In this document: positions 2,256 to 45,336 of the stretch, one piece after another | Layout: the number at the start of each line of letters is the position of its first letter | Numbering within the stretch: position 1 is the first letter of the stretch | DNA from: Podarcis erhardii | Taxonomy: Eukaryota | DNA: 64,000 nucleotides | Direction: 5' to 3' (one strand) | Assembly: GCA_964252035.1 (NCBI GenBank) | Contig: OZ176209.1 | The notes under the pieces: generated by a model | What the model saw: only the letters and a program-made list of their open reading frames with translations | Told to the model about the DNA's origin: nothing | The model's database searches: none | Made by a program: the position numbers and the translations under genes

Positions 2256-2356
2256 AGCAGCTTTCATCAATCTTGCATCCTTCAGATGTTTTACACTACA
2301 ACACTCATCAGTCCCAGCATGGCTGTAGTCCAAAATATCTGGAGGGTAAGGCTGCT
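2256..2356. mobile_element. Degenerate hAT-type MITE (CCTCCAGATG...CATCTGGAGGG family)
   Basis: Same inverted subterminal motifs as the intact copy at 10146-10286. Confidence 0.55.
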
Positions 2357-26470: not shown

Positions 26471-26817
26471 CATTGGCAATTTCCTCTCCCATTTCCCTTG
26501 GAATTCTCCAACATCCCTACCAGTAACATGTCATGAAAATATGAATAGCCACTGTATTGTTTTCTCTCAGATAGGATAGCAACCCTCCCCAAGAATGAAA
26601 GTGGGTGAGTTAAGAGCTTCGCCCAGAAAACTGAGAGGAAATGGATAAGAAGAAAGAAGAAATGAGCAAAGTAATGGCAGGAAAATGGTGAAAATGCTGA
26701 CTGTTGGACAAGCACAAAAGCCTGGTTCGCACCACATGGTAAGCCAGAATATGGTTTGTCATGTGGTTACAGGTTGTGGTTTAAGGCTTTTTTGTGCTTT
26801 TTGAAAACGCCGTTTCT

Positions 26818-28022
26818 CTACTAAAATTGATAACTTGGGACAAAAAGTGACTAACTTGGGACAAAAAGTGACTGATTTGGGACAAAAAGTGAACATCAAT
26901 ACAGAAATTATTCAGGATCTGATACAGGAATCTACTTTGACAAAATTGTCGAGAAGGCGAAGGCGAAGGAGAAAGTTGCTGTTGTTGAACCTAAAGTAAT
27001 ACAAGTGGGAGCCCCAGCCTTACAGAGGCAAATTGAGGACTATAAGTTGAGGCCTTTTATGATTGAATTTAGAAAAAGTCAGATTTTGAGGATCAGAGCC
27101 CTGCCTGGACTGGAGAAGGAAAGTTGGATAGATCCCTTCATGCAGGGATTTACTGACTTTTGGGATTTGGACTTGGGTCGTGAGGAGATTGGAGCTGTGG
27201 GGGACTTTGGATTTGGAGGAATTTTGAAACATGTCCTGAAATACCTTATGGATTTTAGATTTAACCATGGAGATTTGGTTGACCTGTTGAGAAGGAATAA
27301 AAGCATTGCTAGGTTGGAGCTTCCCCGAGATCTGCTCTTCAGTATTAAAGGAAGGAAAATAAGAACAAGATCAGTAGAAGACAAAGTAAAGTGCATGTAT
27401 AAATATGAAGAAGACCTGCAGAAGGGACTTGGAAAAGAGTTAAGAGCTTTGGACAGAAGATCACCAGGTTGATGGACTATTTGGAATTGACGAATGACTG
27501 GCAGTATCCGAGACCAGGGAGAAGAGATGGTGGAAGAAGATTGGAAAAAGTTTAAAGTTTATTTTCAGAAATAGAAATGTTGTAAAATTACTGAGTGTTA
27601 GAAAAATGTTGGAATGAAATCTTATGGCTTTAGTAGAAATGTTATAAGGAGTTAAGCATAAATAAGCATTATAGTATTAATGGAAAATAAGGGTAAAAAT
27701 AAGTTAAGATATTTATATGACAGAAAATAGAGAAAGATGGAAAGGAATTGCTGAAACAGTTAATAGAAGTGGAATACAAAAAGGGAGGTGAGAGGAGGTC
27801 GATGAAACAAGGGTATGAAAGATAGACTACTGAAATGGTATGATGTATGTTTTTAAATTTTGTTTTGTTTTGTTTTGTTTAGGTTAATGTTGTGTTTTGT
27901 ATTGTTTATATATTGTATTGTATTGTTTTTTCCCTTTCTTGTTGTTTTTTTCTTTTTGTCTTTTTTCTTCTCTTTCCTTTTTGTAAGTTTTTAAAAGTAA
28001 TAAATATTATTATAAAAAAAAA
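26818..28022 (+). mobile_element. 5'-truncated ORF2-less L1-derived retroposon (HAL1-like)
   Basis: Perfect 15-bp TSD GAAAACGCCGTTTCT (26803-26817 and 28023-28037); AATAAA and A tail; 3' UTR starts with about 95 nt homologous to the end of L1 ORF2 at 32915-33010. Confidence 0.88.
26820..27472 (+). pseudogene. ORF1p-like reading frame (coiled coil plus RRM-like region), 5'-truncated, with one frameshift
   Basis: Frame from 26820 encodes heptads NLGQKVT NLGQKVT DLGQKVN (stop 26997-26999). An overlapping frame is open 26876-27472 and contains LRIRALP and LPRD motifs reminiscent of L1 ORF1p; ends RSPG-stop. Confidence 0.65.
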
Positions 28023-28865
28023 GAAAACGCCGTTTCTATTTGCCTAAATAGCAGATTGCATGAGGCTTAAGGTTCACCATTTAATCTTGTCTCCATTGTT
28101 CAGAGATCAATAAGGTTTAAAGCACAGATGGAGATCACCCACACATTACAGAGTTCAGGTGTTCATTACACCATTCTAATGGAATCTCTGGCACGTAATC
28201 TACAGGGTACAGGAGCACTACCCTCGACAAAATGTTTTCTTAGTCACCAGCTGCACCGTGGTAATATGCGTTATCATTCATACAGTGCAATCTTTGCGAT
28301 GCAGGACTGCATTTTTATGTGTAGATTTCTATAAAATTATGTCCGGAAATCAATCCTTGACTGTTACTGAGCAACAGCAACAGTTGCTGTGTTACAGAAA
28401 AGGAATGGCATCTATGAACATCTCCTGTTTTGCTTCCGCCTTTACAATTTACCTTGCCTTCCCTCACACTGTTTTATGGTGGCATTAACCCCATGCTAGT
28501 GAGGAGAAAGCTTCAAGGGGGAAAAGATGAAGTGCAAAATCTTTACGGCGGAGCCAGATTATTATGTAACAGAGAATAATTCACGGTGGGAAGTAGAACT
28601 TGAACCTAAGCCAATAATTGCAGCATATCACGCTCGCTAACGCATTTGTCAATAATATCCCCTCTGAGCTAAGTGTATCCTATCCAATATTCCAAAAAAA
28701 ACAATGCTGAAATAAAACAGAGTTCTATTTTTTTTTATTCATTTCTTTCTAAAGCAAAGTTGGTGGCCCTATGCCAAGCACTGTTGGGGGGGGGGGGTGG
28801 AGAGACACCCAGCTACAAACAAGAGGAAAGTTTTTGGCGGTGCCGAAGGCAATCTGCAAGATTGC

Positions 28866-28988
28866 TGGCAATTGTAGTTTGTTAAGGGTCCTGGAAATTG
28901 TAGTTCTGTGAGACTACAGTTCCCAGAACTCTTTGGGTAAAGCCATGTGCTTTAAATGTGCTTTAAATATATGGTGTGGGCGTGACCC
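28866..28988. mobile_element. Short palindromic MITE (ACTGTAGTT/AACTACAGT family)
   Basis: Related to 56339-56435 and 59197-59358 (ACATTTAAAGCAC, GGGAACTGTAGTTT motifs). Confidence 0.55.
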
Positions 28989-31518
28989 TGCAAAAATAAA
29001 CATGGACATATCCAGCCATTGTGATGAGCTATAATATTAGAGTGTACTTACTTTATTTATTAGAAATAATTGTTCAGATTAGACTTAGTCACTCAGTGGA
29101 TGGCCATATGAGTAATAACTTGAGTTGGGAGATGTCATGCCAGAAAGACAGTGGCATGCTTGGCCAAGTAGTCCTGAACTGAGAATCTTATAAGGCTGCC
29201 ATAAAAGTAGGGAAGAGTTAAACTGCATACCATTTCGGTCCCTTCCAGCTCTTTGGATTTCTTTAAAAAGAATGAGCACATTTACAGGCTCTCACTCTTT
29301 TGGGTGGGTTTCAATCGCAGAATAGCAAATTCAGGTTATACAACTAATATTGATTTGGAGCTCCTGCGCAACAACCACCCTCTCCCCCAAAAAACCCCGA
29401 CTTCTAGTGATAAGGAAAGGGATGGGAAAATGCACTGGAATTTGACAGACACGTGCAACAACATCTAACCACCTCACAAAAAATCCAGAATGAATGCTAA
29501 ATACATAGTGTTGGCCAATCTCCCTGCAAACTTTGTGCAAACAAATCAAGTTGAATGCTCATTGAACAAGTCATTGGGAAGAGACCTGTAAAGCAGAGAG
29601 AAACATGAAGAAAATGCCACTATTTCCAACAAAATGCATGAAATAAAATCCTCCTTTTCTTTTTCTCTGCAGTTGAAGCATAACCTAACCTTGTATTTTA
29701 CAACTGCAGCCGACGATAGGTCATTTTGCTTAGAAGTTGACTCATTCCTCCTATTCAGGTGCTAGGAATAAATAGCATTTCAGAGCAAAGCAATTCTGGT
29801 ATTCGCAATAGCACCTTTTTCAATCAAAGCTGAATGTTTATTGCACATTTGAAAAGGCAGATTATCACCTTGCATTCACTTCTATTTCAGGATCTTCTTC
29901 ACACCTTCTGCCAAAAAGCCAGCAATATGAATCACTACTGGCTTAATTTTTCCATAAGCAAAATTAATGTAATTTTACACATCCCTCCTACACAGCCTTG
30001 CTAACCAGATTAGGAAAACTTAATAAAATTAGTTTATTCTAATTACAATAACATCTTGCCACCCCATATAATCATGGGTCTAGAGGAGGTCAATGAGGTC
30101 CAATCCTTTACCCTGAGGATGACCACTCGGGGTCTTTCTGCACTAACCATTTTTAGTGGTGTAGTTGTTACTTTTTCAGGATTTTTGGCATGCAGCCACA
30201 AAGCTTTGTCATTATTCAGCTAGTATTCTGGAATAATGCACTAAAAAAGTGCTTTCTATATTGCAAAAGGTCCAGACTAAATCTTCAGTGTTTTCATTTG
30301 TGTGGCATATGTACAAGCATCTTCCTGCATTTTTTGTATGGAGGGGTTGGGGGTTGGTGGGCATGGTTTTGGAGAGACATGTTTTGTCCCATTTTTCTCT
30401 TGACTAACACAAGTTGTCCACATGTGAAGTCAGTTCAGAGAAGAGATATAGCAGATAAAGATGATGGCACTGAGTCAAAGTACTGCCCATGACAGCAATC
30501 ATTAGCTGCAGACAAAATTTTGTCACAATAACCAGGCTGGCCATATCTCAAGCAGACATGTAGTACCTCTTCTGATCTCCTACACTTCCACAAGATTAGA
30601 ATTCCAGAATGCTAGGTATTAAATATGCACACACAAAAACTGCAAAATGTCTGTCTCCGTGTGCATGCTGGTAACTCCAACATTTACTGGCTCGAACCTG
30701 AGGATCACAGCCATGGAACTTTTCTCAGTTTGGGCACAACCTACCATCAGTGTGCACAGGAAAAACCCTGCATTCACTCTCTAATAACAGTGGCATGCAC
30801 CAGCAGAGCAGACAATCATCTTCAAATGACCTCTTAATAACGTCAGCTCAGACAGAAACTATGCCACTATAAATGGCAAGTGTGGAAAGGCTATCAGTAG
30901 ATCAATCACCACAGTTTAGCCTACATATTTCAGAGTAGGCAAAATCGCCTGCACCTGACCAAGATAGCTACAGGTGGCATCTGTGCAGTTTGTACAGTTC
31001 TCAGCAGTGTCCGTACTAAATAAGTGTTGTTGCATCCCTGCTAGTATCTCTGTCTCTTATTATCTGTAGGCTGTAGGACAGTATACACATATTATATGTA
31101 AACAGGTATAGCCCAGGAGCAGACTTGGCCCTGATGCATATTCAGTAGAACTTGTGAAAGACTGGCAAATTCAAATTAAAGTAATTGAAGTTGATTTGCT
31201 GTTCTTGCACAACAAACCCACTTCTGGGGGGAAGCACACTGGAAGGTGTGGGGTTGCATTTTTTATTTTTATTTTTTTTGACGTGGTGCCATATAACCTT
31301 CCCACAGGCAAAGTCCAATGAACGCTCAATAATTACCCAATATAATCTCACTGTCTGCCCTGCAAACTTTGTGCAAATAGATCAGGATGAATGCTCAGTA
31401 AATAGACCATCTAGAAGCAACCTGCCTCTCCATGAGTGGCTGGGATTGCCCTGATTGGCCATTGCCTCTCGCCACCCACAAACCCCGACCTAGAAGGACT
31501 ATGAAAGACTTTCTCTTC

Positions 31519-33042
31519 ATGACAGATACAGAGTCAGAACGGTTTCAGAGAGAAACAGAACTAACTGTGGTTAAAAAAGTAAAGTACCTAGGGGTAAATA
31601 TAACAGCAAAAAATCTGAGTCTATTTAAGGATAACTATGAAAAATGTTGGTCTGAAATTAAGAGAGACTTGGACAGTTGGACAAAACTGAAGCTTTCTTT
31701 GTTAGGCCGAATTGCTGCTATTAAGATGAATGTATTGCCAAAAATGTTGTTTTTGTTTCAAACACTACAGATTGTGGACAAGACGGAGTGCTTCCGGAGG
31801 TGGCAGAAAGATATATCTAAATTTGTCTGGCAGGGCAAAAAGCCCAGAATTAAGTTTAAGATATTAACAGATGTGAAAGAAAGAGGGGGCTTTGCCCTGC
31901 CAGACCTAAAGTTGTACTATGAAGCCGCAGCTTTCTGCTGGCTAAAAGACTGGCTACTTCTCGAAGACACTGACATACTGGACCTGGAAGGTTTTAACAA
32001 TGCTTTTGGTTGGCATGCATACTTATGGTATGACAAGGTTAAGATCAATAAGGCCTTTAAGAACCATATTGTCAGGAAAGCAGTGTTTAATGTCTGGACA
32101 AAATACAAAGACTTATTGGAAAATAAAACTCCAAGGTGGCTTTCACCTCTGGAAGCTAAGGCCCGAAAAAGACCCAATATGGAGGCCAAATGGCCAAAAT
32201 ATTGGGAAATATTAGAAAAAGATGGAGACAATTGGAAATTGCAGAGTTTGGAGAAAATGAAGGATAAAGTGCGAGACTGGTTACATTATGCTCAGATTAA
32301 AGAAGTTTTTAAAAATGACAAAAAGCTAGGGTTCCAGGTGGAGAAATCGAAGTTAGAAACAGAATTGTTAGAACCAAAGACTAAGGTACTTTCAAGAATG
32401 TATAACTTGCTGTTAAAATGGAATACACAAGACGAAACGGTTAAATCAGCTATGATAAAGTGGGCACAGGACATTGGGTATAATATCATGTTTGAGGACT
32501 GGGAAAGGTTGTGGACCACTGGGCTGAACTTCACTGCATGTAATGCTTTGAAGGAAAATGTAATGAAAATGATATATAGATGGTACATGACCCCAGTTAA
32601 ACTTGCCAAGATATACCATTTGTCTGATAATAAATGTTGGAAATGTAAAGAAAATGAAGGAACATTCTTTCACCTCTGGTGGACTTGCCCTAGGGTGAAG
32701 GCCTTCTGGGAAATGATATATAATGAGCTGAAAAAGGTATTTAAGTATACCTTCACCAAGAAACCAGAGGCCTTCCTTCTGGGCATTGTCGGCCAGAAGG
32801 TGTTAAAGAAGGACAGAACATTTTTTATGTATGCAACAACGGCAGCAAGGATACTCATCGCTAAGAATTGGAAAACTCAAGAACTACCCACACTGGAAGA
32901 GTGGCAGATGCAACTGATGGACTATATGGAACTAGCTGAGATGACTGGCAGAATCCAAGACCTGGGAGAGGAGAGGGTTGAAGAAGATTGGAAGAAATTC
33001 AAGATTTATTTAAAAAAACACTGTAATTTGGTTGAATCTTAA
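31519..33042 (+). CDS. L1 ORF2p fragment: end of RT (KYLG), GGFALPDLKLYY segment and C-terminal Cys/His region (CWKC...FFHLWWTC)
   Basis: 507 uninterrupted codons inside the TSD-defined insertion; motifs typical of vertebrate L1 ORF2p; lacks EN and the YADD core, so it is not autonomous. Confidence 0.9.
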   Translation: MTDTESERFQRETELTVVKKVKYLGVNITAKNLSLFKDNYEKCWSEIKRDLDSWTKLKLSLLGRIAAIKMNVLPKMLFLFQTLQIVDKTECFRRWQKDISKFVWQGKKPRIKFKILTDVKERGGFALPDLKLYYEAAAFCWLKDWLLLEDTDILDLEGFNNAFGWHAYLWYDKVKINKAFKNHIVRKAVFNVWTKYKDLLENKTPRWLSPLEAKARKRPNMEAKWPKYWEILEKDGDNWKLQSLEKMKDKVRDWLHYAQIKEVFKNDKKLGFQVEKSKLETELLEPKTKVLSRMYNLLLKWNTQDETVKSAMIKWAQDIGYNIMFEDWERLWTTGLNFTACNALKENVMKMIYRWYMTPVKLAKIYHLSDNKCWKCKENEGTFFHLWWTCPRVKAFWEMIYNELKKVFKYTFTKKPEAFLLGIVGQKVLKKDRTFFMYATTAARILIAKNWKTQELPTLEEWQMQLMDYMELAEMTGRIQDLGEERVEEDWKKFKIYLKKHCNLVES

Positions 33043-33349
33043 GAAAGGATGCTAGATCATAAATAATTGTGCACCACTAAATTAGAAAGAATTAAGATGA
33101 TAAGTAAATTTGAGAAAAAATTATAAACCTTTTGGAGAATTTATAGATTATATTTAAATGAATTTGACACAAGAGTGCAAACAAGATGATAAATTGCTGG
33201 CAAGAATTGACAACGATGCAAATGGGAGCGGGAGGCGTGAGGGAGTCCAAAGATGTTATGAAAAGATGTTATATTTGTTATACTGTTCTTTATTTTTGCA
33301 TTTATGTTTAAAAACCCAAATAAAATATATATATTTTTTTTAAAAAAAA
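31520..33349 (+). mobile_element. L1 LINE, 5'-truncated, young
   Basis: Perfect 17-bp TSD GAAAGACTTTCTCTTCA (31503-31519 and 33350-33366); open ORF2 C-terminal half; 3' UTR with AATAAA and A tail. Confidence 0.95.
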
Positions 33350-33714
33350 GAAAGACTTTCTCTTCAAACTGGAACTTTGCCTGGACTGCAACAGTGGTTT
33401 GTGACTTGTGGCAGCCAGATCTGACAGAAAGGCCTAAGCTCTGTGCTCTATCCTGAAGCATTAAAACATCCATTAGCAGTGCTCTGAGGTGTAGAAACAA
33501 AATGTGCTGTTTCTTGTAAATGCAATACACGGAACATTTAAAAACAGGGGCTGAGTATGCAGAGCCATACCAATGGATTACACACCCTGTTCTCCTGGCA
33601 TATGTGCCTTCACAGCACCTTCAAGGCCCTGTGTGTCAAGAAAAGCTGGTGTTTTTGCTTCTGCTGCTTTCAGTGCATGCCAGCAAACTGGCATAGACAG
33701 AGGTATCACTGCAA

Positions 33715-34048
33715 AGCTGGAAGGTACCAAGAGGGTCACCTCGTTCAACCCCCCACAATGCAGGAATCTCAACTAGATCATGCATGACAGATGGCCATCC
33801 AACCTCTGCTTAAAAACCCCCAAGGTAGGAGAGTCCACCACTGGATTCCCAAGGGAGTCCATTCCACTGTCGAACAACTTTTACTGTCAGGAAACTCTTC
33901 CTGATGTTTAGTCAGAATCTCCTTTCTTGTAACTTGAAGCCATTGGCTTGGGTCTTAGCCTCCAAAACAGGAGTAAACAAGCTTGCTCCATCCTCCATGT
34001 GACAGCCCTTTAGATATTTGAAGGTGGCTATCATATCTCCTTTAAGTC
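33715..34048 (-). mobile_element. CR1 LINE 3' fragment
   Basis: Homologous to 10941-11130 and to the reverse complement of 13318-13556 (ACAGATGGCCATCCAACCTCTGCTTAAA). Confidence 0.85.
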
Positions 34049-35555
34049 ACCCTCAAGTTGCATGCAGTTGCTTTTAAGTTACATTCTAATTTCATGATGG
34101 CTGGCAAACTGATAATGTACAGAACAACGTTAAAATAATCTCAAAATATAAGAGTATAAAACTACAACAAAAGACCGACAACAAAACCAGCAAGTCTGTT
34201 TGTGCTGCCGCAACCGACATCTCATCCGCTGTCACTGGTATATCTCCTAAGCAACAGGGCCCAACCCCCAAATCGGTTTCCATACTTATCTCATTCCTCC
34301 TCCCACTATCACTAGCTCTGCCAAGAAGCCTCCATGGGGTTTCTATCAATAATACGGCAACTGCATAGCTGCTTCAGATGGAAAGCGCAGTGCAAAAACA
34401 ACATAATAAGTAAGGGGGGGAGTCACTGGAAATCCCATAATAAAGGGGCAAAAGTAAAGGAGTGCCTACAGGTTGGTTCTTGTGCCAGGCACCCCATGAG
34501 CAAGCAAGAAGCAGTCCTGGGAGGGAGGGTGCCCATGTGGATTGGGTCCCAGTGTCCAGAACGCCTGGAGTTGTGGTTGAGCAAATAGGATAGTTTACCA
34601 TATTTTATCCTTGCCTTGACAGCTGTCTGACACAGATTAGACAGATGATTCCCCTCCTCCCCAAGCTAAATAAACTGATGCTGAAAGCTTCACCTGTTCA
34701 TTTTTTTGTGTCAACTTCTGTTACAGGCACAGGACCAGCTGTGAAGGGGTGGGGACTTTCTAGAAGCAAAGAAACTTAGGAAGCCAGAGAATTGTGGACC
34801 AACAAAACATAAGGTTATCTGATTCGAAACTGAGTGGTTTTGACCAGCTTAATATCTCAGTAAAGACCAAGGATCCCAATGGTGTTTTTAAGGGGTCCTC
34901 AAGGGGTCTAATATTAAATTACAAATTAAATTTGAATGCTATACTGAGTTCTTTAATGCTAGAAGTTCATTTTTCAGCATCTTCACCCTCATTCTCTGTT
35001 CTGCCTGCCTCTTTCTCTACCCATATATCAGCTAGGCTCCTCTTTAACAAACCGTTGCTCCCAGGGCACCCAAAGTGTTGTTGCTGTAAATTATTGTTGT
35101 TGAATACACTAATTTCAGGAGGGAAAATAATGTAACATTTGATCCTTGCCTGTGCAATGTTATTAGACGTGCATGTTTCAAAATCAATCAAATATTGCAT
35201 GGGGGTTTTCTCTGTGTGTTCTTGACTTTGTTCAGATAATATTTTCCAGAGACCAGAGCTACAATGCTCAACACATTTACTAGGCCAGGGAGGAAGCATC
35301 ATCAGACATAATGGGACATACTTCTGAATAAATGCCATAGGATTGCGCAGTTAGATTTTTTTGGTAGAGGTTGCCAACCTTTTCAGGCCTGTGTGCACAT
35401 TTGGAAAAGTGAAAAATTCCATTTCATCCCCAGCCATCTTAGCCAATGGTCAAGAATGATGGTAGTTGTAGTCCAGCAACAACTGATGCCCCATGATTGA
35501 CGCATACTATAACTTGATTTTTCTACCTTAGGCTGATGATGAGCACAGCTAGCGC

Positions 35556-35923
35556 GCAGACTGTCCAAGGGTTCCTATTTTCCAGGAACAGTCTCAGATT
35601 TACAGAAGTCATCCCAGTTTCTGATTTGATCCTGGAATATCTCACTTTACCTTAGGATGTCCCTATTTTCATTGGAGAAATGTTGGAGGGTATGGAGTTA
35701 TGCGACCCCCGAGCCAAGGAGCTAAGTAACTATACAACCTTTAGAAGACATCTGAAGGCAGCCCTGTATAGGGAAGTTTTTTAATGTTCAATGTTTTGTC
35801 ATGTTTTTATATATGTTGGAAGCCGCCCAGAGTGGCTGGGGCATAAAAAATAAAGCTATTATTATTATTATTATTATTGAATAGGACGTCCCTGTTTTCA
35901 CTGGATAAATGCTGTAGGATATG
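35556..35923. mobile_element. Composite MITE carrying an L2 3' end between duplicated 40-bp terminal modules
   Basis: Direct repeats 35655-35694 and 35884-35923; enclosed L2-type tail (GGAAGCCGCCCAGAG...AATAAA (TTA)n); near-matching 8-bp flanks GCTAGCGC / GCTAGCGT. Confidence 0.7.
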
Positions 35924-36676
35924 CTAGCGTCATGACTGTGGGGGAAACTGAACCAGTCCTAATTTAGCAGGTTTACCACTACAACACAGTGGCTTCCACA
36001 GTTGCCAGTTTAGGACTTGGGCACAATCTTCATTTTCCCTCATGGTTGCAGAATTTACCTATTGGAATAAGCAGGCCTAATTCTGGGCATGGTTTTCTCC
36101 ACTGAAGATAATGCATGACTCTGCCAAAAATCTGAGTGCTGTTGCAGTCAATGTTGGTTTCAGCAAAATTGCTCAGTTGAGACCTCTGCAGTGTTAGTCC
36201 TCTAATGCTCAGCTGAGCCCTTAATCAACATTGCCACCCCAACAGCAGCCTCCCAGATGTGCTGAATCCAGGTGCCCACCAAATTACCTCATTAATTCCC
36301 GTTTCTTCATCATTCTTTTGTTGAGGGTCACTGCCAATAAGCATTACAATGGGATTATTGTTTTACACTCCGCGTGAAAGAGGCGCTTAGCAGGAAGAAA
36401 TATGTTTAATCGAGCTAAAATCAGTTTAAGAAATGAATGCAAATTGAAATTATTTGGAACACTGCTAGAGTTTGGAAATTAATGCCATGTAGTAAAGGAA
36501 TTAAAACATCTCACTGGCTGAACTGGCTGGTGCATCAGTCTGTAGATTTCATTAACACCCACACAAATACAAGCACAGCTACATCCCACTAATAAAACCC
36601 ACCATCCAAATATAGAATCCTCATGAATACTTGTTGTACAGACAGGTTTGTTAAGTGTACTGCATGCCCAAATGTA

Positions 36677-36826
36677 CCGTATTTTTCTGTGTATAAGACT
36701 AGGTTATCTAACCCAAAAAATAGGTTTAAAATTGGGGCTCGTCTTATACATGGGTAGTGCTGAGGGTGGTTTTCTTAATTTGGAGTCCCCCAAAACAGGG
36801 GGCATCTTATACACAAAAAAATATGG
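36677..36826. mobile_element. Tc1/mariner MITE (CCGTATTTTT TIR)
   Basis: TA|CCGTATTTTTCTGTGTATAAGA ... TCTTATACACAAAAAAATATGG|CA. Confidence 0.8.
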
Positions 36827-39800
36827 CAACTAGCAGTTGTTTGAACTTCTGATTATCCAAATGGTTTTGTAGGACCTACATACCGGTATATGTTTCATAG
36901 AAATGGGACTGTAATGGACATAGATCAAGCTGATAAGGATTATTTTTGCCTGGTAATGTGGCTATTCAAAGCAAATGAAATGGGCCTGTTGGTAAAATAT
37001 TCATCATTGTTGAAATGTTTCGATCTCCTTTTAATTATAGAATCAAATAAGTTGAAAGAGGCTATTGTATTCTGCCCAGCTTGTCCCCCACCTGAACCCC
37101 CTAATGGCTCAGATCCAAGGCCAGACAAATACCAGAGAGAGAGTAGTCTGGCCGTGTACACCGTGTACAGTGGCCTCTCCCACTGACAAGTTGGCTAAAC
37201 AGAGAAAATGTCTCAAAGCTTCAGAGAATACACTAGCAGGGGAGTGGCTCACACTACATTTCCGCTAACAGCCTGGCTGCAGAGCCCTAGCTCAAAGTGC
37301 CTGCAGTTCCCTTCCCTGAACTGGGCGGGGGGGGATCACTATGTGACTCCCCTGAGCTCCCAATTCAACACCAGCAGCACCTGACTCTAAAAGGAGCGTT
37401 GTCTACCACCCACTGATAATACTGATCGCCTGTTGGAACAGAGGGGCCACAACCTGGTGCCCTCCCTCGGGGGCCCTCCAGTTACCATTTTTATGGTGCA
37501 TTCATGATAATTTGTGTTGCTTTTGCTATGGGGGTAGGTCACACACAATTCCACTCTCAGTACTGTTTGCACTTAAACATTTTGAACCTTGCACGCTGCT
37601 TCCTTTGCACTCGGCACCGATCCCGAAAGTTCCTCCTGGAATCCCTTAACTTTTTTAATACCCCAAATGTTTTATCTTTGTTCCACTTTTGTTGAATCAC
37701 AGGATTTTGTCGGACAGCAATAATGCAAGGGGAGCATCACATGACAACTAATAAAACGGAATCAATTCACCACTGGTGCACTGTTATTGTGTCAAGAACA
37801 TGTTGCAGGATAAACCCACAATAAAACACTAGTCTGGAGGGGGCCACTACTCCTTAACAGGCAGCAGTAACTCTCTTAGGCAGAATAGGATGGATGCCTG
37901 GCCTACTCAGCTGGCCTAGACAATGAATAGCTTTGAACAGGCTGGAACAGTACCTGGCAAGGTGGCCATTCTAGCCCTTTCCAAAGCTTTGATAGATGGT
38001 TGGAGGTACTTGATTTAGCAGACAGTAGCATGGAGTAAGTGATGAGATGGAGGGAACCCTTCTTAGCTAAAGGATTTCACTACAAATTAATCTTTCCATT
38101 TCAGTCTGTTCTAACACGGGATGCCAGAGTAAAAAAGAATTACTGGTGTCAGTTCACATATTTAGCTACAAATCTTCTCAAGTACCAAGGAATCAAGTAT
38201 TGAAGTGATGTATATGCATGTGTGAACCATCCCTTAGAACTGCAGGCCGGACAAGAAAAATATGTTTGTGGTAATGAGAGATTTTATTTTTTAAAAAATC
38301 CCAATGCTTAAATTACAGTGGGGGGGGAGGGAACCTTCTTAGCTGTTGTTTTTACAAAGCAACAGAGGACATGATTTGGCTAAACTTTAGTGAGTCCAAG
38401 GGTGGGGTTTCTGGATTTCATTAAGCCTCTCCAAACACACAGGCACATTATATTTGTATGTGTGGAAATTATCAGTTGAAACTACTGTTATCCGGTGATG
38501 GGCTTACATGTGAAAACTGGAATACTGAAGAACCCTGTTAGTAAAATTGCAAAATAAAAACAAATATCAACAAGAACTACTTAAGGTGGGTGTAAGAAAG
38601 TAAACATATCAATTTGTGCAAGGTCAGGCTAGGTGCCACCTGGATAAAATAAAAAGATGAACAGGCACCAGTGCTCACTGATGCAAAAAAACCCATTCTC
38701 CCCTTTGTTTAGTTCCTTTAAGTTGCTCCCCTCTCCCCGCCTTGCACTTAGGTAGCACGTGAGACAGAATGTAAGAATTGGAACCAACACACCTGTTCAG
38801 CATCAGTATAAACATATATGAACCAGTACAAGACAAGAAACAACTCAGACTTACACCTAAGTCAAAGATATGAAACAACATTACAATTGTAAGGTGCCAT
38901 AATATATGTGTGCCTCAAATTGGGGGCACCAGAAGCTAGTTACTTCCTAATACTCTGCTTTCTCCACATACCTGAATGACTAAGCATTGCAGCCCAAGGA
39001 TACCAGGTCAGGCAGCAGTAATTGTGTGCTGACACCATCACACCATGTCAGTTGTTGTTCATCTAGCCCTAAAAGCTACAGCCTCAAAGCTCACACATCT
39101 GACTTTTATTAGGAGCAGCAGCAGCAGCAACCCCACTGCCTTCTCTGGAACTCAGACTTTGGCTCAGTTTTGACTATGCTGCTGCCTCTGGCCCCTTGGA
39201 CAGTGATCTGCTTTCCTGAAGCCTGACCTGGCCCCTGAGACCCTAATCTGCTTGCTCTGACCTAGACGGTGCCTGTCCAGACCATGCCCTTGCCTCAGAG
39301 CTTGGTGACCAAGAGCAGAGTCTGGTTAAGGCCTGACAAGATGTGACCTGAGTCCAAGGCAGGAGGTTGAAATGGAAAATGAATCCTCATGACTGGCAGG
39401 CCTCTTTATCAGCATCTCCCATGCCCTATCGGAAGCAGCAAATTGCCTCCATTGCAGCATATTATCCAAAAGAAAAATAGATATTTCATGCTTCAGCTAA
39501 AATAATTAATGCAAGGGAATGACCTGGTGGAAATGGGCTAATTATGCTAAAGACATTGTGAGCATAGAGTGCTGTAGCGCTGCTCATTGTTGATGTGACC
39601 TTGTCTTTCCATCACATATTAAGCATCACAGTGTATTTGAGATAGTAGAAAGTTGCTGTTGATAGAAGGTTCCAGGGCAGGGCAATGCGGTAGGTGAGAA
39701 TGTTTTCTCACTGTGTGATCTCTCAAAAGTTTTGAGACAAAACACTATTCTGAATCAAATGTGTTCAGTTTTCTTTATTAATCCCAAAGCTAACACCCAA

Positions 39801-41117
39801 AACTGTGCTTTACATTGACATGATTTCATTCTTTGGCACAATCCTAGTCCCAGTTCCTACTATAAGCCTAGACACATACAACTGAAATAATGGTGTTATG
39901 CACACCCTAACCTCCAAGCGGGGTGCCCAGAACATAGTTGGTTTTGGTTTCCTTGAACAAAGGTAACTGGAGAGTGAGGGCATTTTCTGCAATGTTAAGA
40001 TTTATTTACACACATTATATATGCAGGCTGAGCATAAGATGGATGGGCTCATAAGTATTAACTCTCCAACAGATCACGGTCCCCCATTAGGAGGGAGCCA
40101 CCAAAGCAATAGTTTTAGATTATGCAGACAGCAAGACAGGCCTCCACCTCTCTTTTTTCATCTCTATTACCAAGACTGTTCTCTTTCAAACACCCCAGTG
40201 ACATCACCTCCAGCCAGGGGAAGGGGAAGAGAGACACGCTCCCTTCTGCTAATCTTCCAGAAGAACCATTGTCCTAGCCTACATTACAAAGCAGACACTT
40301 AGCAGACCTGGCTAAGTGGGAAGCTAGAGGACATCTGAAATGCACAGCATTACGTGCTTGTGGTTTTCACTGAGAACAATAGACTCCAGCTGAGCCTGGG
40401 TGTCTGAATAGCACAGGCCCCATCATGACAAAAGTTGAGGTGTTCTGGGCCTAACAATTAAAATCCCTGAAACCAGTACAAATGCTGCCAATTCTTCCAC
40501 CTCACATTCCCAATATGGTGCTTCGTTGATCATCACACAACATGTTGATTACCTTCTTCAGGTAATGAGGGTGAGATTCCCATGTGGGCTGCCCTCTGGA
40601 ACTGGGGTGGATCTAAACACAGGGAAAAAAACGCTATAAATGAGAAAATTAGATTGTTCTAACAAAAGGGGGGAAAAACTCTGACGGAAAATTACGTTTT
40701 AACATTTCCTGCTCTCTGGCCCCATCTGGTGTTGCATGTTTATAGCGCATACAAATTGCTGTTTCTTTACTAATGTAGCTGAGTCCCTGCATACCAGTAG
40801 ACATTGCAGCCAGAGAGAAGAGTGGGTAGGGGAAGAAGCAAAAATGGGTGGGGCAATGGATGTGGCTCTTACTTTTCTACAGCAGGCTATATTTCAGCCA
40901 GGCAAAAGCCAGAGGTGTCTGTGCATACCCACACACCTCTCTCCATCCATCTAGGTGAGTGAAATGCTATTATCACATTCTGGTCATGTGAAAGCATCTA
41001 AGGAGCAGGGCTGGGTGAGGGATATGACCTGAAGAGACGATGCATGGCCCTGGAGAATCCCAAGCACTGTTTATCCCTCCATTGGCTCTATTCCACACAG
41101 ACCTTGTGTGGTGTATA

Positions 41118-41324
41118 CAGTGGTACCTCAGGTTACATACGCTTCCCAGAAATAGTACCTCGGGTTAAGAACTTTGCTTCAGGATGAGAACAGAAATCAT
41201 GCTCCAGCGGTGCGGCAGCAGCGGGAGGCTCCATTAGCTAAAGTGGTGCTTCAGGTTAAGAACAGTTTCAGGTTAAGTACGGACCTCTGGAACGAATTAA
41301 GTACTTAACCTGAGGTTACCACTG
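41118..41324. mobile_element. Tc1/mariner MITE with internal deletion
   Basis: CAGTGGTACCTC TIR; TA TSDs. Confidence 0.9.
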
Positions 41325-42257
41325 TATTATTATGGCATAAATGCTATAGAAAGCCCAGTAGAACATATGTATCATGGTCTGCTAGGTTTTGTGTTTCTAT
41401 GTATCCAACCTTTAGTAAATATTTTTTACTTAAAGTCAGTGCAAGGGAGGGATTCAACTGATGTCTTTGAACAATCTTATTTCTCTTTATGTGGGGTATA
41501 TTTGCATTAATGAAAGCATATTTGCTGGAAACTCTCATCAAGTTGCAGACAATGTTGTTTGTAGACTGGGCACACCTGCATCCAGCTGTTAGCCCATGTT
41601 TCCTGAATTCTATTCAGCCCAACAATGGGAAAAACATTGTTTTCTTATTTTTCCCCTCACAATATTGCACGTCACTTGTATACTGTACTGATCTTACCCT
41701 GTTCTCTTCTAGCCATTCCAGCAGAGCGGGGATTTGCATTGTTAGGGGATAATTTCTCTTAAAAACAAATGGAGGAAAAACATAATTTAAGCCTTTCCTC
41801 ACAGAGGGTAAACACTTATACACTGTTTTGTTTTGAAACTGATACCTAACCACTGGCAAGCAAGTTCAGCTCAGGGGATTTTTCTGAGCATGAATCAAGG
41901 CCAAAGAATTCCTAAGCTTGCTTTCATAATGCAACCTCAGTTCACAACAGACAGGGCCTATTCAAATGATACATGTTTTCCACTTCAGAGTATTATCAGG
42001 CCCACAATTATTATTACTATAGCTATTTATATATTCACTGTTGAAAGTGAACTAATATTTCCTGAGAATTCCCATGATGTTATTTTGGCACATCAAGTTT
42101 GTTTTTGCATTCATTCATTCATTCATTCATTCAAAATAGTTTTATTTAGCCGTCCCATAGTAAACAACCCTCAGGACAGCTCACAACATTTTAAAAGAAC
42201 AACAAATATAACAAAGATTCAAATTACAAAATAAGAGGCAAGTCTCTTACTTTGTTT

Positions 42258-42277
42258 TTATTATTATTATTATTATT
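42258..42277. repeat. (TTA)n microsatellite
   Basis: Direct reading. Confidence 0.85.
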
Positions 42278-42337
42278 GTGTTTTAAATACGTAGCAAGCC
42301 ACCTCAAGAACTATAGTTGACAGCCAGGCTTTAAATA

Positions 42338-42571
42338 CAGTGGTACTTCAGGTTAAGTACTTAATTCATTCCGGAGGTCCATTCTTAAGCTGAAACTGTT
42401 CTTAACCTGAAGCACCACTTTAGCTAATGAGGCCTCCTGATGACGCCAGAGCACGATTTCTGTTCTCATCCTGAAGCAAAGTTCTTAATCTGAAGCACTA
42501 TTTCTGGGTTAGCAGAGTCTGTAACCTGAAGCGTATGTAACCTGAAGCGTGTGTAACCTGAGGTACCACTG
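42338..42571. mobile_element. Tc1/mariner MITE
   Basis: TIRs and TA TSDs; same family as 14566. Confidence 0.9.
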
Positions 42572-43798
42572 TACTCCAAAATAAATCAAATTGTAACAAC
42601 TTACAGTGCAATCCTACAAACGTCTACTCTTAATCAGTTTCATTCAGTGAGGCTTATTCTCAGGTACTGTGATAGGAATGCATGCTGAGCAGTCAGCAGA
42701 CAGGCACAGCACAAACCAATACAGAAAATAAGGAAGGTAGCAAGTTCTGATCCTGCTCTGTTAAATTCACCATAGATGTCTCAGCTAACCTATCAAAAAA
42801 GACATACAGTATGTACTTATTATTTCTTTAACAAGATTTACAGTCTGCTTAATAATAATAATAAGTCTTGGGTAAAGGACTTACATAAAATAGTATATTC
42901 ATGAGAAAATACTGATAAAATTGATAAATTTTAAAACAAATAGAATATAGATAAAATAAACAGTTTAAGAAAAAGCACATATAATAAAATTACATGTCTG
43001 CATAGGCTTGCCTAAACACAATTCTTCTTAGCAGGCGCGAAAACAACACAACGATGGCAATTATTGCATATGGCTGCTTGTTGTATTGCAGACACTGATA
43101 TTTACAGAGGAAATATATGGAGCCACATGCAATTAAATGAGTCTGGCCATGTTACAGCCTTGACTGATATTGTGACTTCCCATTAATACCAGTCCTAATA
43201 TTCTTTATGCAGCACACTTTCCCTGCCATGCTGCCATTAATAAAAGCATGTTCAGCTCTTTGAGTAGTAGTTCCTTGTTTGGATCTTCAAAAATATTTAA
43301 TAAAAGAAGCTTAGGCTCTAAGAATACTTTCTGATTAAGTGTGACAGACTTCTGCAAACCATAAAAATAGAAGAACAGCAGTCACAGTAGACAATAAAAT
43401 TTAGCAGAGCAGATAATATAATATTTATTGAAGTTTCAAATAAGACAGATACACAAAAAGACAAAGAAAACACACAAAACAAGTATACTTTCAGTCCTTA
43501 TTTTCTTATACCTTATTTCCCACGACTTCCTCCCGCCTCCCCTTCCTGTATTCCAGTTCCAAATATTAGTTCAACAAGTTCTTAAGTTTTTTACCTTATT
43601 TCATTGTTATATCCGTCCTTCTACTTAAACCCTTTTTCCAAGGTCGAATTTCCCAATTTTATATTAATACCAAACCAAAAATACAAAATAAGAAATATAT
43701 ATAAAAAAAAGTATTTATACAACCTTTGGATTGATCAAACCCCACCCTCCCTTTCCCGGTTTCGATCCCCAAACCAATGTCCATCAGTCCATATGCTA

Positions 43799-44449
43799 TC
43801 AGCCTGGCGATCTCACATCAGAGGCTTTTAAGTCTCTCTCAGTTCCTCTTTGCCGGTTCTTTGGATAGTCCTTCATATTAAAGCCCAAGTCTCGGAGGAG
43901 TACAATCCCAAAAAAGTCCATATTTCTTCCAGCCAGGCCTCCATGTTTAAAAGAATTGATGAATTTAAATGTCCCAAGCGCTCGAACATCCATCTTAATC
44001 AAATTAGTAATCCACAAGTCTTCAGGTCTCCTTCTAGATAGGTCTCTCCATTCTTCCTTCTCCAATTCAAGCCAAATCTTCATCACCCAGTTCTTATTTT
44101 CCTTTGTGACCTTCCTGCCAGGCCTCTGGCCTTCCTTAGCCTTCTGCAACATTATAACTCCTCCTTCCTTTCCCTCCAGATCCTCATATTTCTCTTCCAC
44201 TTGTTCCACTTTCTCAAGTTTGTCAAGTTTCTTTTCCTGCTCAGCTGCAAAGTCTTTTAATTCCGCTACAGGGGCTTTTGGTTCAAAGACAAAGACTTGA
44301 GTCAAGTCCCTTCCATTTCCAGTAAAGTTATTTACTGTTTCATTCAGTCCCATGACCCCTGTAGCCAAAATATTACTTTGTTCTTGAAGCTTTCCCAAGA
44401 GATAAAATGTCTTGTTCAACTCAGTGAGTATTTTTCCACTTCCAGCCAT
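43799..44449 (-). CDS. Intact 216-aa ORF of the ORF2-less retroposon; likely a derived L1 ORF1p (E/K-rich coiled-coil-like segment plus RRM-like remnant)
   Basis: Strong Kozak context AGAATGG with an in-frame upstream stop; gapless similarity to the 27005-27472 ORF; shared RSPG-stop end. Confidence 0.7.
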   Translation of the reverse strand: MAGSGKILTELNKTFYLLGKLQEQSNILATGVMGLNETVNNFTGNGRDLTQVFVFEPKAPVAELKDFAAEQEKKLDKLEKVEQVEEKYEDLEGKEGGVIMLQKAKEGQRPGRKVTKENKNWVMKIWLELEKEEWRDLSRRRPEDLWITNLIKMDVRALGTFKFINSFKHGGLAGRNMDFFGIVLLRDLGFNMKDYPKNRQRGTERDLKASDVRSPG

Positions 44450-44949
44450 TCTTGCAGTGTCCCAAAACCCCCTCTAGAGGGATTATGGATATTTACTATC
44501 CTTCTAATTCCAGTCCCAAAAACAAAATAACTTATTTTTCAACGATTTATAACCAAAATGTAACAAATCCAACTGGCAAAGGCAGCAAAAACAATGTTGC
44601 TTTGTATTCCCCAACTTTGACAGCTACTTTTGACAGCTGTCAAAGTCTTCTGTATCTTTCCAACAGGCTCTCTCGCTGATCACTCCCGGGTCCCGGGGGG
44701 TTATGCAGCTCTCAAAATCCACTCTTATCCTCCAGCAAAATTACTTATACTGTCCAATCGTGAAATTGATGACTTTGTTCCGTTACAATGAGAGATATTC
44801 TCTCGACCTTAGTTATTTAGTCCTTGCTTTAAGTTGTCTACAAGAGGGGAAGACGGACTTCCTTTTTGTATCTTCCCCGGTCGTTCCAAATTCCAAGAAA
44901 AAAATTCCTTTTTAAGTCCAATTTCTATATTACTCACGGGTTGTTGCTT

Positions 44950-45249
44950 TTTAGTCCGAATGTTCTCAGGAAAAAGTCAGCGCTCTCCGTCCATGGCATG
45001 CGGCTTCGCTCAGCAGGGGAAGCAGAGGACTCTCAGCACCGCGCCGCTCCCGTCCCCCGTCCCGAAGCCTTTAAAAAGGCTCCTTCGCAGGTCGGGGGGG
45101 CGCAAATGGTGCCCGCCGAGTCACCAAGTCCACAGGCTTCTGCGCCTGTGGTTTCTAAGGGTCCCCACATCGCCGGCGCGGCAGAACCCGATCCCTGCGG
45201 ATCCGATTCCCTCCGGAGCTCGGAGGGAATCCGCCATTAGACGTTGGCG
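44950..45249 (-). promoter_or_regulatory. CpG-rich putative internal Pol II promoter of the retroposon
   Basis: Dense CpGs relative to the flanks; YY1-like TAATGGCGG near the 5' end; internal promoters are established for L1 5' UTRs. Confidence 0.55.
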
Positions 45250-45336
45250 AATAAAATTTAGCAGAGCAGATAAAGCCACGGTTAAAAGCAGCTTACACCA
45301 CATGCTAGAGTGTAACTTTTAAGAAAACAAACTCAC

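What the first reader, a model, noticed from the sequence alone, without database searches (positions are those of the whole stretch)
26818..45249. A diversified family of ORF2-less, protein-coding L1-dependent retroposons (HAL1-like) with a conserved protein
Seen: two separate insertions, each with a perfect long TSD (15 and 24 bp), encode homologous but very divergent ORFs. Gapless block LEKESWIDPFMQGFTDFWDLDLGREEIGAVGDFGF vs LEKEEWRDLSRRRPEDLWITNLIKMDVRALGTFKF has 13/35 identities. The C-termini YKYEEDLQKGLGKELRALDRRSPG* vs KDYPKNRQRGTERDLKASDVRSPG* have 10/24. The last codons differ only synonymously (AGA TCA CCA GGT TGA vs AGA TCG CCA GGC TGA). Neither element has EN or RT. Established: Half-L1 (HAL1) elements keep ORF1 and lose ORF2. 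Inference: a long-lived lizard lineage of L1 parasites keeps a shortened ORF1p-derived protein under purifying selection, possibly to package its RNA with, compete for, or restrict L1 ORF2p. The conserved W-x-D...D-x-W pattern is not one I recognise from canonical ORF1p. This is the best candidate for an undescribed system in the window.
Basis: partly seen in the sequence, partly recalled or inferred. Interest (0 to 1): 0.85.

Follow-up and report, generated by a model that had tools for sequence, protein, structure and literature searches.

The report
Lizard half-L1 with shrunken ORF1
These are two copies of a wall-lizard (Podarcis) "half-LINE-1" jumping gene that has lost the copying enzyme. 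It keeps a shrunken but selectively maintained version of the LINE-1 ORF1 protein. It is a reptile counterpart of mammalian HAL1 elements and was still moving recently.

Summary
Both insertions have perfect target-site duplications of 15 and 24 bp. Their ORFs are homologous (BLASTP 2e-7). Neither has an endonuclease or reverse transcriptase.

They belong to a diversified Podarcis family, seen here as about 40 uncharacterised 171-216 aa proteins in roughly ten groups below 50% identity.

A full-length L1 from P. lilfordi (L011) shows the origin. The elements are L1s with almost all of ORF2 deleted. What remains is the L1 5'UTR, an ORF1-derived mini-gene, the last ~42 ORF2 codons (now non-coding) and the L1 3'UTR.

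All seven elements with DNA share the same junction, so there was one origin and not repeated deletions.

The mini-protein keeps the coiled coil (trimer prediction 0.79 against control 0.01) and a conserved C-terminal block. Every member lacks the RRM core.

dN/dS is 0.23-0.46 overall (p 3e-5 to 3e-12), and 0.11-0.34 at the two ends.

e2 looks complete and very young: three related species carry the exact empty site. e1 is a dead, 5'-truncated copy without an ATG.

The "W-x-D...D-x-W" pattern is ordinary lacertid ORF1p.

Verdict: a new variant of a known kind (HAL1-like). This scan had already noted the family at 12 or more other places in this genome. The protein's role is inferred, not shown.

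The parts
26803..26817 (.). 5' target-site duplication of e1 (15 bp); the second copy is at 28023-28037
   Evidence: family D5, 100% identity
26818..28022 (+). e1: a 5'-truncated, decayed copy of the half-L1 family (1205 bp)
   Evidence: It is 85% identical over e1 25-675 to a longer copy in P. lilfordi (L011 18354-19008). That copy has about 900 nt more at its 5' end, including the L1-type 5'UTR.
26831..26893 (+). 3 x 21-bp tandem repeat inside the remnant of the coiled-coil coding region. It reads ..NLGQKVT.. in a frame different from the downstream ORF.
   Evidence: family D1. The relative in L011 has fewer units.
27005..27472 (+). Relic of the mini-ORF1 (155 codons, no ATG). It holds RRM strand 1 and helix 1, a partial C-terminal domain including KGRKIRTRSVED, and the tail ending RRSPG.
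   Evidence: BLASTP 3e-19 to the ORF1 of a full-length L1. Alignment A4.
27469..27574 (+). Last ~42 codons of L1 ORF2 (LMDYLELT...EEDWKKFKVYFQK*), non-coding here, with one frame shift. The mini-ORF's TGA lies inside the L-M-D codons read out of frame.
   Evidence: tblastn 2e-8. blastn 79-82% to five L1 3' ends and 73% to a sixth; each match starts at e1 position 652-654.
27575..28022 (+). L1-type 3'UTR. G-rich motif GGGAGGTGAGAGG at 27783-27795, AATAAA at 27999-28004, A-tail at 28014-28022.
43393..43416 (.). Target-site duplication of e2 (24 bp); the second copy is at 45250-45273
   Evidence: family D3. Contigs of three related species skip 43392->45250 with 24 shared letters (table 5).
43417..45249 (-). 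e2: an apparently complete, very young copy of the half-L1 family (1833 bp)
   Evidence: Its 5' end aligns from 11 nt inside the 5' end of a full-length L1.
44450..45249 (-). 5'UTR (800 nt, CpG-rich). Its first 320 nt (44930-45249) are 76% identical to the 5'UTR of a full-length L1 and about 75% identical to the 5'UTRs of other half-L1 subfamilies.
   Evidence: Summed word depth over roughly 44911-45274 is 10-40 times that of the rest of the element.
43799..44449 (-). Intact mini-ORF1 (216 aa, ATG to TGA). It has an N-terminal heptad helix (aa 3-45), a degenerate RRM remnant, and a conserved C-terminal block ...LLRDLGFNMKDYPKNRQRGTERDLKASDVRSPG.
43705..43810 (-). Degenerate remnant of the ORF2 C-terminus (..RLIAYGLMDIGLGIETGKGRVGFDQSKG..) abutting and overlapping the stop codon. 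The ends are approximate.
   Evidence: The same arrangement is seen in L001-L005.
43417..43704 (-). 3'UTR. G-rich motif GGGAGGCGGGAGG at 43529-43541, AATAAA at 43424-43429. There is no A-tail; the element ends ...TATTATA.
   Evidence: No unusual RNA fold (z = -1.1).
31520..33349 (+). Comparator, not part of the family: a 5'-truncated autonomous-type L1 (ORF2 C-terminal 506 codons plus 3'UTR plus A-tail). It is flanked by the 17-bp duplication GAAAGACTTTCTCTTCA (31503-31519 and 33350-33366).
   Evidence: 96% identical to a Podarcis muralis RT protein.

Best explanation
Both insertions belong to one old, diversified family of non-autonomous L1 derivatives in lacertid lizards (Podarcis).

Origin: the family arose once from an L1 by a deletion of about 3.7 kb. 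The deletion runs from the 3' tail of ORF1 to 42 codons before the end of ORF2.

What each full copy keeps:
- the L1 5'UTR, which presumably holds the promoter
- a shrunken ORF1
- a dead stub of ORF2
- the L1 3'UTR and polyadenylation signal

The mini-ORF1 starts at what is an internal Met (about residue 44) of the parental ORF1. It retains the coiled coil. In every member it has lost the core of the RRM (about 30-40 residues). It ends in a conserved 33-residue block. A stop codon then appears because the ORF2 stub is read out of frame.

How it works:
- Shown: the anatomy, the homology, the constant junction, purifying selection, and a recent insertion.
- Inferred: the RNA is transcribed from the L1-type 5'UTR. 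The mini-protein trimerises through its coiled coil and binds its own RNA in cis. L1 ORF2p supplied in trans by autonomous L1s then copies the RNA into the genome by target-primed reverse transcription, giving the 15-24 bp target-site duplications.

Because the ORF is kept open and constrained in all subfamilies, the protein most likely promotes the element's own propagation.

e2 is a complete and very recent insertion. e1 is a 5'-truncated dead copy.
For: Anatomy:
- The target-site duplications are exact.
- e1 carries the last ~42 ORF2 codons and the L1 3'UTR (tblastn 2e-8). Matches to six independent L1 3' ends (73-82% identity) all start at e1 652-654, which is the stop codon.
- The first 320 nt of e2 are 76% identical to the 5'UTR of a full-length L1 flanked by its own target-site duplication (L011 ~4435-10450).

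ORF1 origin:
- The e1 ORF matches that L1's ORF1 at BLASTP 3e-19.
- That ORF1 matches human and mouse ORF1p structures 2YKP, 2YKO and 2LDY collinearly through the RRM and C-terminal domain (E 0.008-0.013).
- e1 links to e2 at 2e-7. The e1-type protein P0007 links to e2 at 6.8e-21 against 1.84 billion proteins.
- Alignment A4 shows the same RRM-core gap in every member.

Single origin:
- All seven elements with DNA have their stop codon abutting the same ORF2-tail remnant.
- The 5'UTRs of different subfamilies are about 75% identical.

Selection:
- Overall dN/dS is 0.23-0.46, Fisher p 3e-5 to 3e-12.
- The N-terminus gives 0.11-0.16 in the P0001-3 group.
- The C-terminal block gives 0.15-0.34, even where synonymous sites are saturated (18.5 of 24.2 differ between e2 and P0007). 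Its conservation is therefore at the protein level and not the nucleotide level.

Coiled coil:
- AlphaFold2 is confident only for helix 3-42.
- A three-copy prediction of residues 1-100 scores 0.79 against a best control of 0.01. The runs agree in at least 76% of contacts, partner pLDDT is at least 68, and the contacts are in-register heptad contacts over residues 4-45. The tool's calibration: the mark was reached by 21 of 30 proteins solved as pairs of one chain and 0 of 23 solved as single chains. That calibration is for microbes and for two copies, so it holds only roughly here.

Recent activity:
- Organism A has both junctions. Organisms B, C and F each have a contig with the exact empty site and about 99%-identical flanks.
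- 146-465 contig pieces per genome are at least 99% like e2.
Against: - No RNA run holding e2 was found, so expression is not shown.
- e2-type and P0001-type proteins have no direct significant similarity to the canonical ORF1. hhalign of A3 gives probability 0.2 and blastp gives E >= 0.1. Their ORF1 descent rests on the e1/P0007 bridge and on position.
- No member hits Pfam Transposase_22. The cognate canonical ORF1 does not hit it either, so this result is uninformative.
- The AlphaFold2 model is poor overall (pLDDT 46.7). The middle of the protein is riddled with indels, so much of the protein may be dispensable.
- dN/dS of 0.3-0.5 in the middle is only weak constraint.
- The proteins came from ORF callers, so only open copies were sampled.
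- e2 has no A-tail and its target site is not a typical TTTT/AA.
- Only one full-length L1 was available, and its ORF1 is broken by two frame changes.
- Dependence on L1 ORF2p is inferred from structure alone.
Confidence: 0.8

Rival explanations
1. The ORF is a passively inherited relic. The elements spread as RNA-only parasites, like a SINE or a processed L1 deletion product. The protein does nothing, and the apparent conservation reflects recent common ancestry or constraints on the RNA.
For: - The middle of the protein tolerates large indels.
- The AlphaFold2 model has low confidence outside the first helix.
- The 5'UTR is more conserved at nucleotide level than the ORF: 75% against 68% between e2 and L004.
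- The scan noted a non-coding 1675-bp L1 parasite in the same genome (s1-259098).
- No RNA evidence was found.
Against: - ORFs of 171-216 codons stay open in about ten lineages that differ by 50-70% in protein sequence.
- dN/dS is significantly below 1 in every pair of intact copies.
- In the C-terminal block, amino acids are kept while synonymous sites are saturated. An RNA or DNA constraint would not give that pattern.
Confidence: 0.12
2. The two elements are independent internal-deletion products of different full-length L1s. They would have arisen sporadically during reverse transcription or by recombination, and would not be members of a replicating lineage.
For: - L1s do produce internally deleted copies. 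L009 holds one in which a coiled-coil-like piece is joined to the middle of the endonuclease domain.
- e1 carries patches with 80-91% identity to present-day L1s.
Against: - The same junction is present in seven elements from several subfamilies.
- All members share the same internal RRM-core gap.
- Homologous 5'UTRs sit in front of e1-type, e2-type and P0025-type ORFs.
- Each genome holds 1127-4467 similar contig pieces.
- The scan noted at least 12 further copies in this genome.
Confidence: 0.03
3. The mini-protein is a host-domesticated, L1-derived gene (like L1TD1), or a host-selected inhibitor of L1, and not a transposon gene.
For: Purifying selection on an ORF1-derived protein. A predicted coiled coil that could in principle co-assemble with ORF1p.
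Against: - It is multi-copy, flanked by target-site duplications and still inserting. e2 is absent from the orthologous site in three related species.
- There is no single conserved orthologous locus.
- Each copy carries L1 UTRs on both sides.
Confidence: 0.02

Closest known systems
Mammalian HAL1 ('half-L1') elements. They are non-autonomous L1 derivatives that encode only ORF1p and arose several times in mammals (Bao & Jurka 2010, as summarised in PMC5753468 and PMC5322556).
   Same: They are L1-derived and have no EN/RT. They carry a single ORF1-derived ORF, a polyadenylation signal and target-site duplications, and they form multi-copy families that presumably depend on L1 ORF2p in trans.
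   Different: The host is a squamate (Podarcis). The origin is independent, from a lizard L1 clade.

The ORF is not a whole ORF1. It lacks the first ~43 residues and the RRM core, and in most subfamilies also 17 residues of the C-terminal domain.

A stub of the last ~42 ORF2 codons is retained as non-coding sequence and supplies the stop codon.

I could not read Bao & Jurka directly, so the comparison with HAL1 ORF1 completeness rests on the reviews and on general knowledge.
L1 ORF1p (coiled coil, RRM and C-terminal domain; structures 2YKP, 2YKO, 2LDY)
   Same: The mini-protein has an N-terminal parallel heptad coiled coil (predicted). It is collinear with RRM strand 1 and helix 1 (..LRIRALP.., ..FTDFW..) and with part of the C-terminal domain. 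In e1-type copies the KGRKIRxRSVED stretch is retained.
   Different: The RRM core (canonical RAQGRKKPRDCLITLGSREERDKILSLHFQ in L011) is missing in every member. No folded RNA-binding domain is predicted.
HeT-A of Drosophila telomeres. It is a gag/ORF1-only non-LTR element that relies on the reverse transcriptase of TART or TAHRE (general knowledge; see also 10.1101/2025.06.09.658640).
   Same: A non-LTR element that keeps only its ORF1/gag-like gene and borrows the reverse transcriptase of an autonomous relative.
   Different: HeT-A belongs to a different clade (Jockey). It is telomere-specific and has a complete Gag. Nothing suggests targeting or a host benefit here.
L1TD1 (the domesticated ORF1p-derived host gene of mammals, PMC4161310)
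   Same: An ORF1p-derived protein under selection.
   Different: L1TD1 is a single-copy host gene. The present ORF sits in mobile, multi-copy elements flanked by target-site duplications.

Membership tests
HAL1-type (half-L1) non-autonomous L1 derivative | Both ends derive from L1 (5'UTR and 3' end) | tested here: met
   e2 1-320 is 76% identical to the 5'UTR of a full-length L1 flanked by its own target-site duplication (L011). The e1 tail is 73-82% identical to six L1 3' ends. The G-rich 3'UTR motif is shared.
HAL1-type (half-L1) non-autonomous L1 derivative | No ORF2 (no endonuclease, no reverse transcriptase) | tested here: met
   The elements are 1.2 and 1.8 kb long. Pfam finds nothing. 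tblastn with ORF2 finds only the last ~42 codons.
HAL1-type (half-L1) non-autonomous L1 derivative | The single ORF is homologous to L1 ORF1 | tested here: met
   e1 ORF against the ORF1 of the L011 L1: 3e-19. That ORF1 against solved ORF1p: E 0.008. e2-type is linked only transitively; the direct comparison is not significant.
HAL1-type (half-L1) non-autonomous L1 derivative | The ORF1 is complete (coiled coil, RRM and C-terminal domain) | tested here: not met
   The RRM core is missing in all members (A4). There is no Pfam hit in 17 members. AlphaFold2 predicts no beta-sheet.
HAL1-type (half-L1) non-autonomous L1 derivative | A replicating family whose copies share one structure | tested here: met
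   The same junction occurs in 7 elements. About 40 proteins fall into several 90% clusters. Between 1127 and 4467 similar contig pieces were laid per genome.
HAL1-type (half-L1) non-autonomous L1 derivative | Hallmarks of L1-type insertion: target-site duplication and A-tail | tested here: inconclusive
   e1 has a 15-bp duplication, an A9 tail and a TTTTT/GAAAA target. e2 has a 24-bp duplication and an exact empty site, but no A-tail and an atypical target.
HAL1-type (half-L1) non-autonomous L1 derivative | Mobilised in trans by L1 ORF2p | not testable with these tools
   This needs a retrotransposition assay.
L1 ORF1p (Pfam Transposase_22 and related domains) | Trimerising coiled coil | tested here: met
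   Prediction only. Three copies of residues 1-100 score 0.79 against a best control of 0.01, with at least 76% contact agreement and pLDDT of at least 68. AlphaFold2 gives helix 3-42 at pLDDT 70-83. The number of chains was imposed, so the stoichiometry is not tested.
L1 ORF1p (Pfam Transposase_22 and related domains) | Intact RRM and C-terminal domain; match to the Pfam model | tested here: not met
   The cognate full ORF1 also fails the Pfam model, so the Pfam result alone says little. The deletion of the RRM core is the decisive point.
Domesticated L1-derived host gene (L1TD1-like) | A single orthologous locus conserved between species | tested here: not met
   The e2 site is empty in three related species. 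The sequence is multi-copy.

The most novel reading that the evidence does not exclude
The mini-ORF1p may be a specialised hijacking adaptor. It has shed its own RNA-binding core but kept the coiled coil and a conserved charged C-terminal peptide. It could co-assemble with full-length L1 ORF1p trimers, or dock on ORF2p or a host factor through the C-terminal block. That would bring the parasite RNA into L1 ribonucleoprotein particles, and at high dose it might poison them. This would make it a protein-level parasite and modulator of L1 that co-evolves with the many concurrent L1 lineages of lizards.
Probability: 0.2. Interest if true: 0.75.

Novelty: new variant of a known kind. Interest (0 to 1): 0.5.

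Why it matters
HAL1-type elements have so far been described in mammals, as far as the library I could search shows. I found no paper on a squamate counterpart. I could not consult Dfam or Repbase.

A recently active reptile family is a natural deletion experiment on ORF1p. The RRM core is gone, yet the coiled coil and a short C-terminal peptide stay under purifying selection. This pattern points to which parts of ORF1p a parasite of L1 needs in cis, and that can be tested directly with reporter assays.

The family also matters for annotating lacertid genomes. Copies are currently listed as 'hypothetical predicted protein' in P. lilfordi.

Insertions such as e2 are species-specific presence/absence markers.

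Tried and rejected
- Pfam on both ORFs and on 17 family members gave no meaningful hit.
- A profile search of PDB sequences with the family gave only sub-threshold coiled-coil noise, mainly coronavirus spike HR1.
- The ESM Atlas feature search gave nothing above 0.80.
- The AlphaFold2 model was too poor (pLDDT 46.7) for a fold search, so none was run.
- The Flavobacterium Ig-like proteins in the phmmer list (P0008, P0009, P0014) are repeat-driven and spurious.
- I tested whether the conserved C-terminal block is ORF2 sequence read in another frame. The last 117 nt of the ORF show no similarity to the 200 nt of ORF2 upstream of LMDY (z -0.9 to 2.4). This idea is rejected.
- The first three L1 loci fetched to find a cognate ORF1 (L007-L009) were 5'-truncated, as was L010. 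A motif scan for canonical ORF1p in L001-L008 and the window found nothing. L011 finally supplied a full-length L1.
- Direct profile comparison of e2-type proteins with the canonical ORF1 was not significant.
- No RNA run holding e2 was found, so expression could not be assessed.
- The e2 3'UTR has no unusual fold, and Rfam finds nothing in the elements.
- Bao & Jurka 2010 is not in the held library.
- Summed word depth from read laying is not a copy number, as the tool itself warns, and I did not use it as one.


Full report
**1. Observation**

The window has no N.

Element e1 spans 26818-28022 on the + strand. It is flanked by an exact 15-bp duplication (26803-26817 and 28023-28037) and ends in AATAAA plus A9.

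Element e2 spans 43417-45249 on the - strand. It is flanked by an exact 24-bp duplication (43393-43416 and 45250-45273).

The two ORFs are 27005-27472 (155 aa) and 43799-44449 (216 aa). They align at BLASTP 2e-7. Neither ORF has any Pfam domain.

**2. e1 is a dead copy and e2 looks complete**

The e1 ORF starts at a GTG and has no ATG. Upstream lies a 3x21-bp tandem repeat that reads as coiled-coil heptads in another frame.

A relative 85% identical in P. lilfordi (L011 18354-19008) extends about 900 nt further 5'. It has an L1-type 5'UTR and an ATG-initiated N-terminus. e1 is therefore 5'-truncated inside the ORF.

e2 starts 11 nt inside the 5' end of a full-length L1 when the two are aligned. 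It has an intact ATG-to-TGA ORF.

**3. It is a family**

phmmer against 1.84 billion representatives and two word-indexed searches returned only proteins of 154-215 aa with the same ends. These are P0001-P0007, P0010-P0013 and P0025-P0030. With their cluster mates the total is about 40 sequences.

All are unnamed Logan contigs, except three 'Hypothetical predicted protein [Podarcis lilfordi]'.

The L1 fragment in the window (31520-33349) is 96% identical to a Podarcis muralis RT protein. The genome is therefore a Podarcis or a close relative.

The family alignment shows three parts:
- a conserved N-terminal helix, MAxxGKLQAELxRxFxLxGxLQEQ
- a middle full of indels
- a conserved C-terminal block, LLRDLxFNIKDYQQNRRRGTERDLRASDVR[SN]PG

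**4. Origin from L1**

Directly after its stop codon, e1 carries the last ~42 codons of ORF2 and the L1 3'UTR. Alignments to six independent L1 3' ends all begin at e1 652-654, which is the stop codon.

All seven elements for which I have DNA (e1, e2, L001-L005) show the same arrangement. The stop codon abuts a more or less decayed ..RLMDY.. remnant. In e1 the TGA lies inside the L-M-D codons of ORF2 read out of frame.

The last 117 nt of the ORF are not ORF2-derived.

5'UTRs about 75% identical precede e2-type, e1-type and P0025-type ORFs.

The decisive locus is L011 (P. lilfordi). It holds a roughly 6-kb L1 flanked by a 14-nt duplication. Its parts are a 5'UTR (76% identical to e2 1-320), ORF1 (5370 to about 6435, broken by frame changes near 5590 and near 6290), ORF2 from 6443 (endonuclease Pfam 4.9e-11), and a tail.

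The ORF1 piece 5588-6307 matches human and mouse ORF1p structures collinearly through the RRM and C-terminal domain (E 0.008-0.013). It does not reach Pfam Transposase_22.

The e1 ORF matches this ORF1 at 3e-19. One large gap removes the canonical stretch ..RAQGRKKPRDCLITLGSREERDKILSLHFQ.., which is the RRM core. Alignment A4 shows the same gap in every family member. Most subfamilies also lack 17 residues (GRKIRxRSVED...) that e1-type copies keep.

The e1-type N-terminus matches the canonical ORF1 from an internal Met (..ALVKINESLESL..).

The mini-ORF's tail (EDLxKG..) continues in the reading frame that stays open across the nominal ORF1-ORF2 spacer of the L011 copy. By my recollection of ORF1p alignments it resembles the ..LxELLKG.. 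end of mammalian ORF1p. I therefore read the tail as the natural ORF1 C-terminus and not as a new peptide. This rests on one damaged L1 copy and is not settled.

e2-type proteins have no direct significant match to the canonical ORF1. Their descent rests on the bridge through e1 and P0007 and on the shared architecture.

**5. Selection**

Codon alignments of six intact copies give an overall dN/dS of 0.23-0.46, with Fisher p from 3e-5 to 3e-12.

| Region | dN/dS |
|---|---|
| N-terminal helix (P0001-3 group) | 0.11-0.16 |
| C-terminal block | 0.15-0.34 |
| Middle | 0.31-0.53 |

Between e2 and P0007, 18.5 of 24.2 synonymous sites in the C-terminal block differ while the peptide is kept. The constraint is therefore on the protein.

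The decayed e1 against P0007 gives 0.56-1.45, as expected for a dead copy.

One caveat applies: only open copies were sampled.

**6. Structure**

AlphaFold2 with the 17-sequence alignment is confident only for helix 3-42. The mean pLDDT is 46.7 and no sheet is predicted.

A three-copy prediction of residues 1-100 scored 0.79 against a best control of 0.01. The runs agree in at least 76% of contacts, and partner pLDDT is at least 68. The contacts are in register with heptad spacing over residues 4-45.

The tool's calibration is as follows. The mark was reached by 21 of 30 proteins solved as pairs of one chain and by 0 of 23 solved as single chains. The counts are for microbes and for two copies, so they hold only roughly here. 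This supports a parallel coiled coil. It does not establish the number of chains.

**7. Activity**

Contigs of organism A cross both e2 junctions. One contig each from organisms B, C and F skips exactly 43392->45250, with the 24-nt duplication counted once. Flanks are about 99% identical in B and C; the right flank in F is about 93%.

e2 therefore inserted after these lineages split, or it is polymorphic.

Between 1127 and 4467 contig pieces at least 85% alike were laid per genome, and 146-465 of them are at least 99% alike. The first ~340 nt of e2 are far more abundant than the rest, which fits a 5'UTR module shared with autonomous L1s.

No RNA run holding e2 was found.

Organism names were coded by the tool.

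**8. Interpretation**

This is a monophyletic, diversified and recently active family of ORF2-deleted L1 derivatives. It is HAL1-like in architecture, but its ORF1 is reduced to a coiled coil, RRM/C-terminal-domain scraps and a conserved tail.

Dependence on L1 ORF2p, cis-binding of the mini-protein to its RNA, and any interaction with L1 ORF1p are inferences.

**9. Novelty**

HAL1 is known in mammals (PMC5753468, PMC5322556). I found no report for squamates. I could not check Dfam or Repbase.

This scan had already noted the family at 12 or more other places in the same genome, and two of those notes were followed up with the same conclusion.

- the full-length L1 comparator
- the mapping of both breakpoints
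- the RRM-core gap shared by all members
- region-wise dN/dS
- the coiled-coil prediction
- the empty-site evidence for e2

Noticed in passing
window 31503-33366: A 5'-truncated autonomous-type L1 (ORF2 C-terminal 506 codons, 3'UTR and A-tail) with a perfect 17-bp target-site duplication GAAAGACTTTCTCTTCA. It is 96% identical at protein level to a Podarcis muralis RT protein.
   Followed up: partly
window 44911-45274 (first ~340 nt of e2): In all four genomes laid, this CpG-rich 5' module has a summed word depth 10-40 times that of the rest of e2. It is evidently shared with much more abundant repeats. These include at least full-length L1s, since it is 76% identical to the 5'UTR of the L011 L1.
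   Followed up: partly
L009 7200-7600 (P. lilfordi OX395133.1): Another kind of internally deleted L1. A coiled-coil-like piece (..ARIDKNH*MVTNLTTKVETLTKKV) runs straight into the middle of the endonuclease domain (KKRGVVIYAKD...). This shows that sporadic internal deletions also occur.
   Followed up: no
L011 18985-19176: In the e1-type copy of P. lilfordi, the ORF2 stub (..LMGYMELTE) is followed by ORF2 sequence that restarts about 80 codons from the ORF2 end (ILKKPEAFLLG...EEWQMKV). This could be a chimera, a template switch or a nested L1. The locus ends before it can be resolved.
   Followed up: no
L006 7514-10549 (P. lilfordi OX395126.1): Two half-L1 copies of different subfamilies lie head to tail. 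The first is e1-type (ORF from 8454). It is followed within about 15 nt by a P0025-type copy (ORF 9962-10549) whose C-terminus is altered.
   Followed up: no
window 8654-8725: A tRNA-like match (Rfam RF00005, 30.1 bits, just above threshold). It is probably the head of a tRNA-derived SINE.
   Followed up: no
window 43417-43430: e2 ends ...AATAAATATTATA with no A-tail, directly before its target-site duplication. e1 and the neighbouring L1 do have A-tails. The 3' ends of lizard L1-type insertions may be more varied than in mammals.
   Followed up: no
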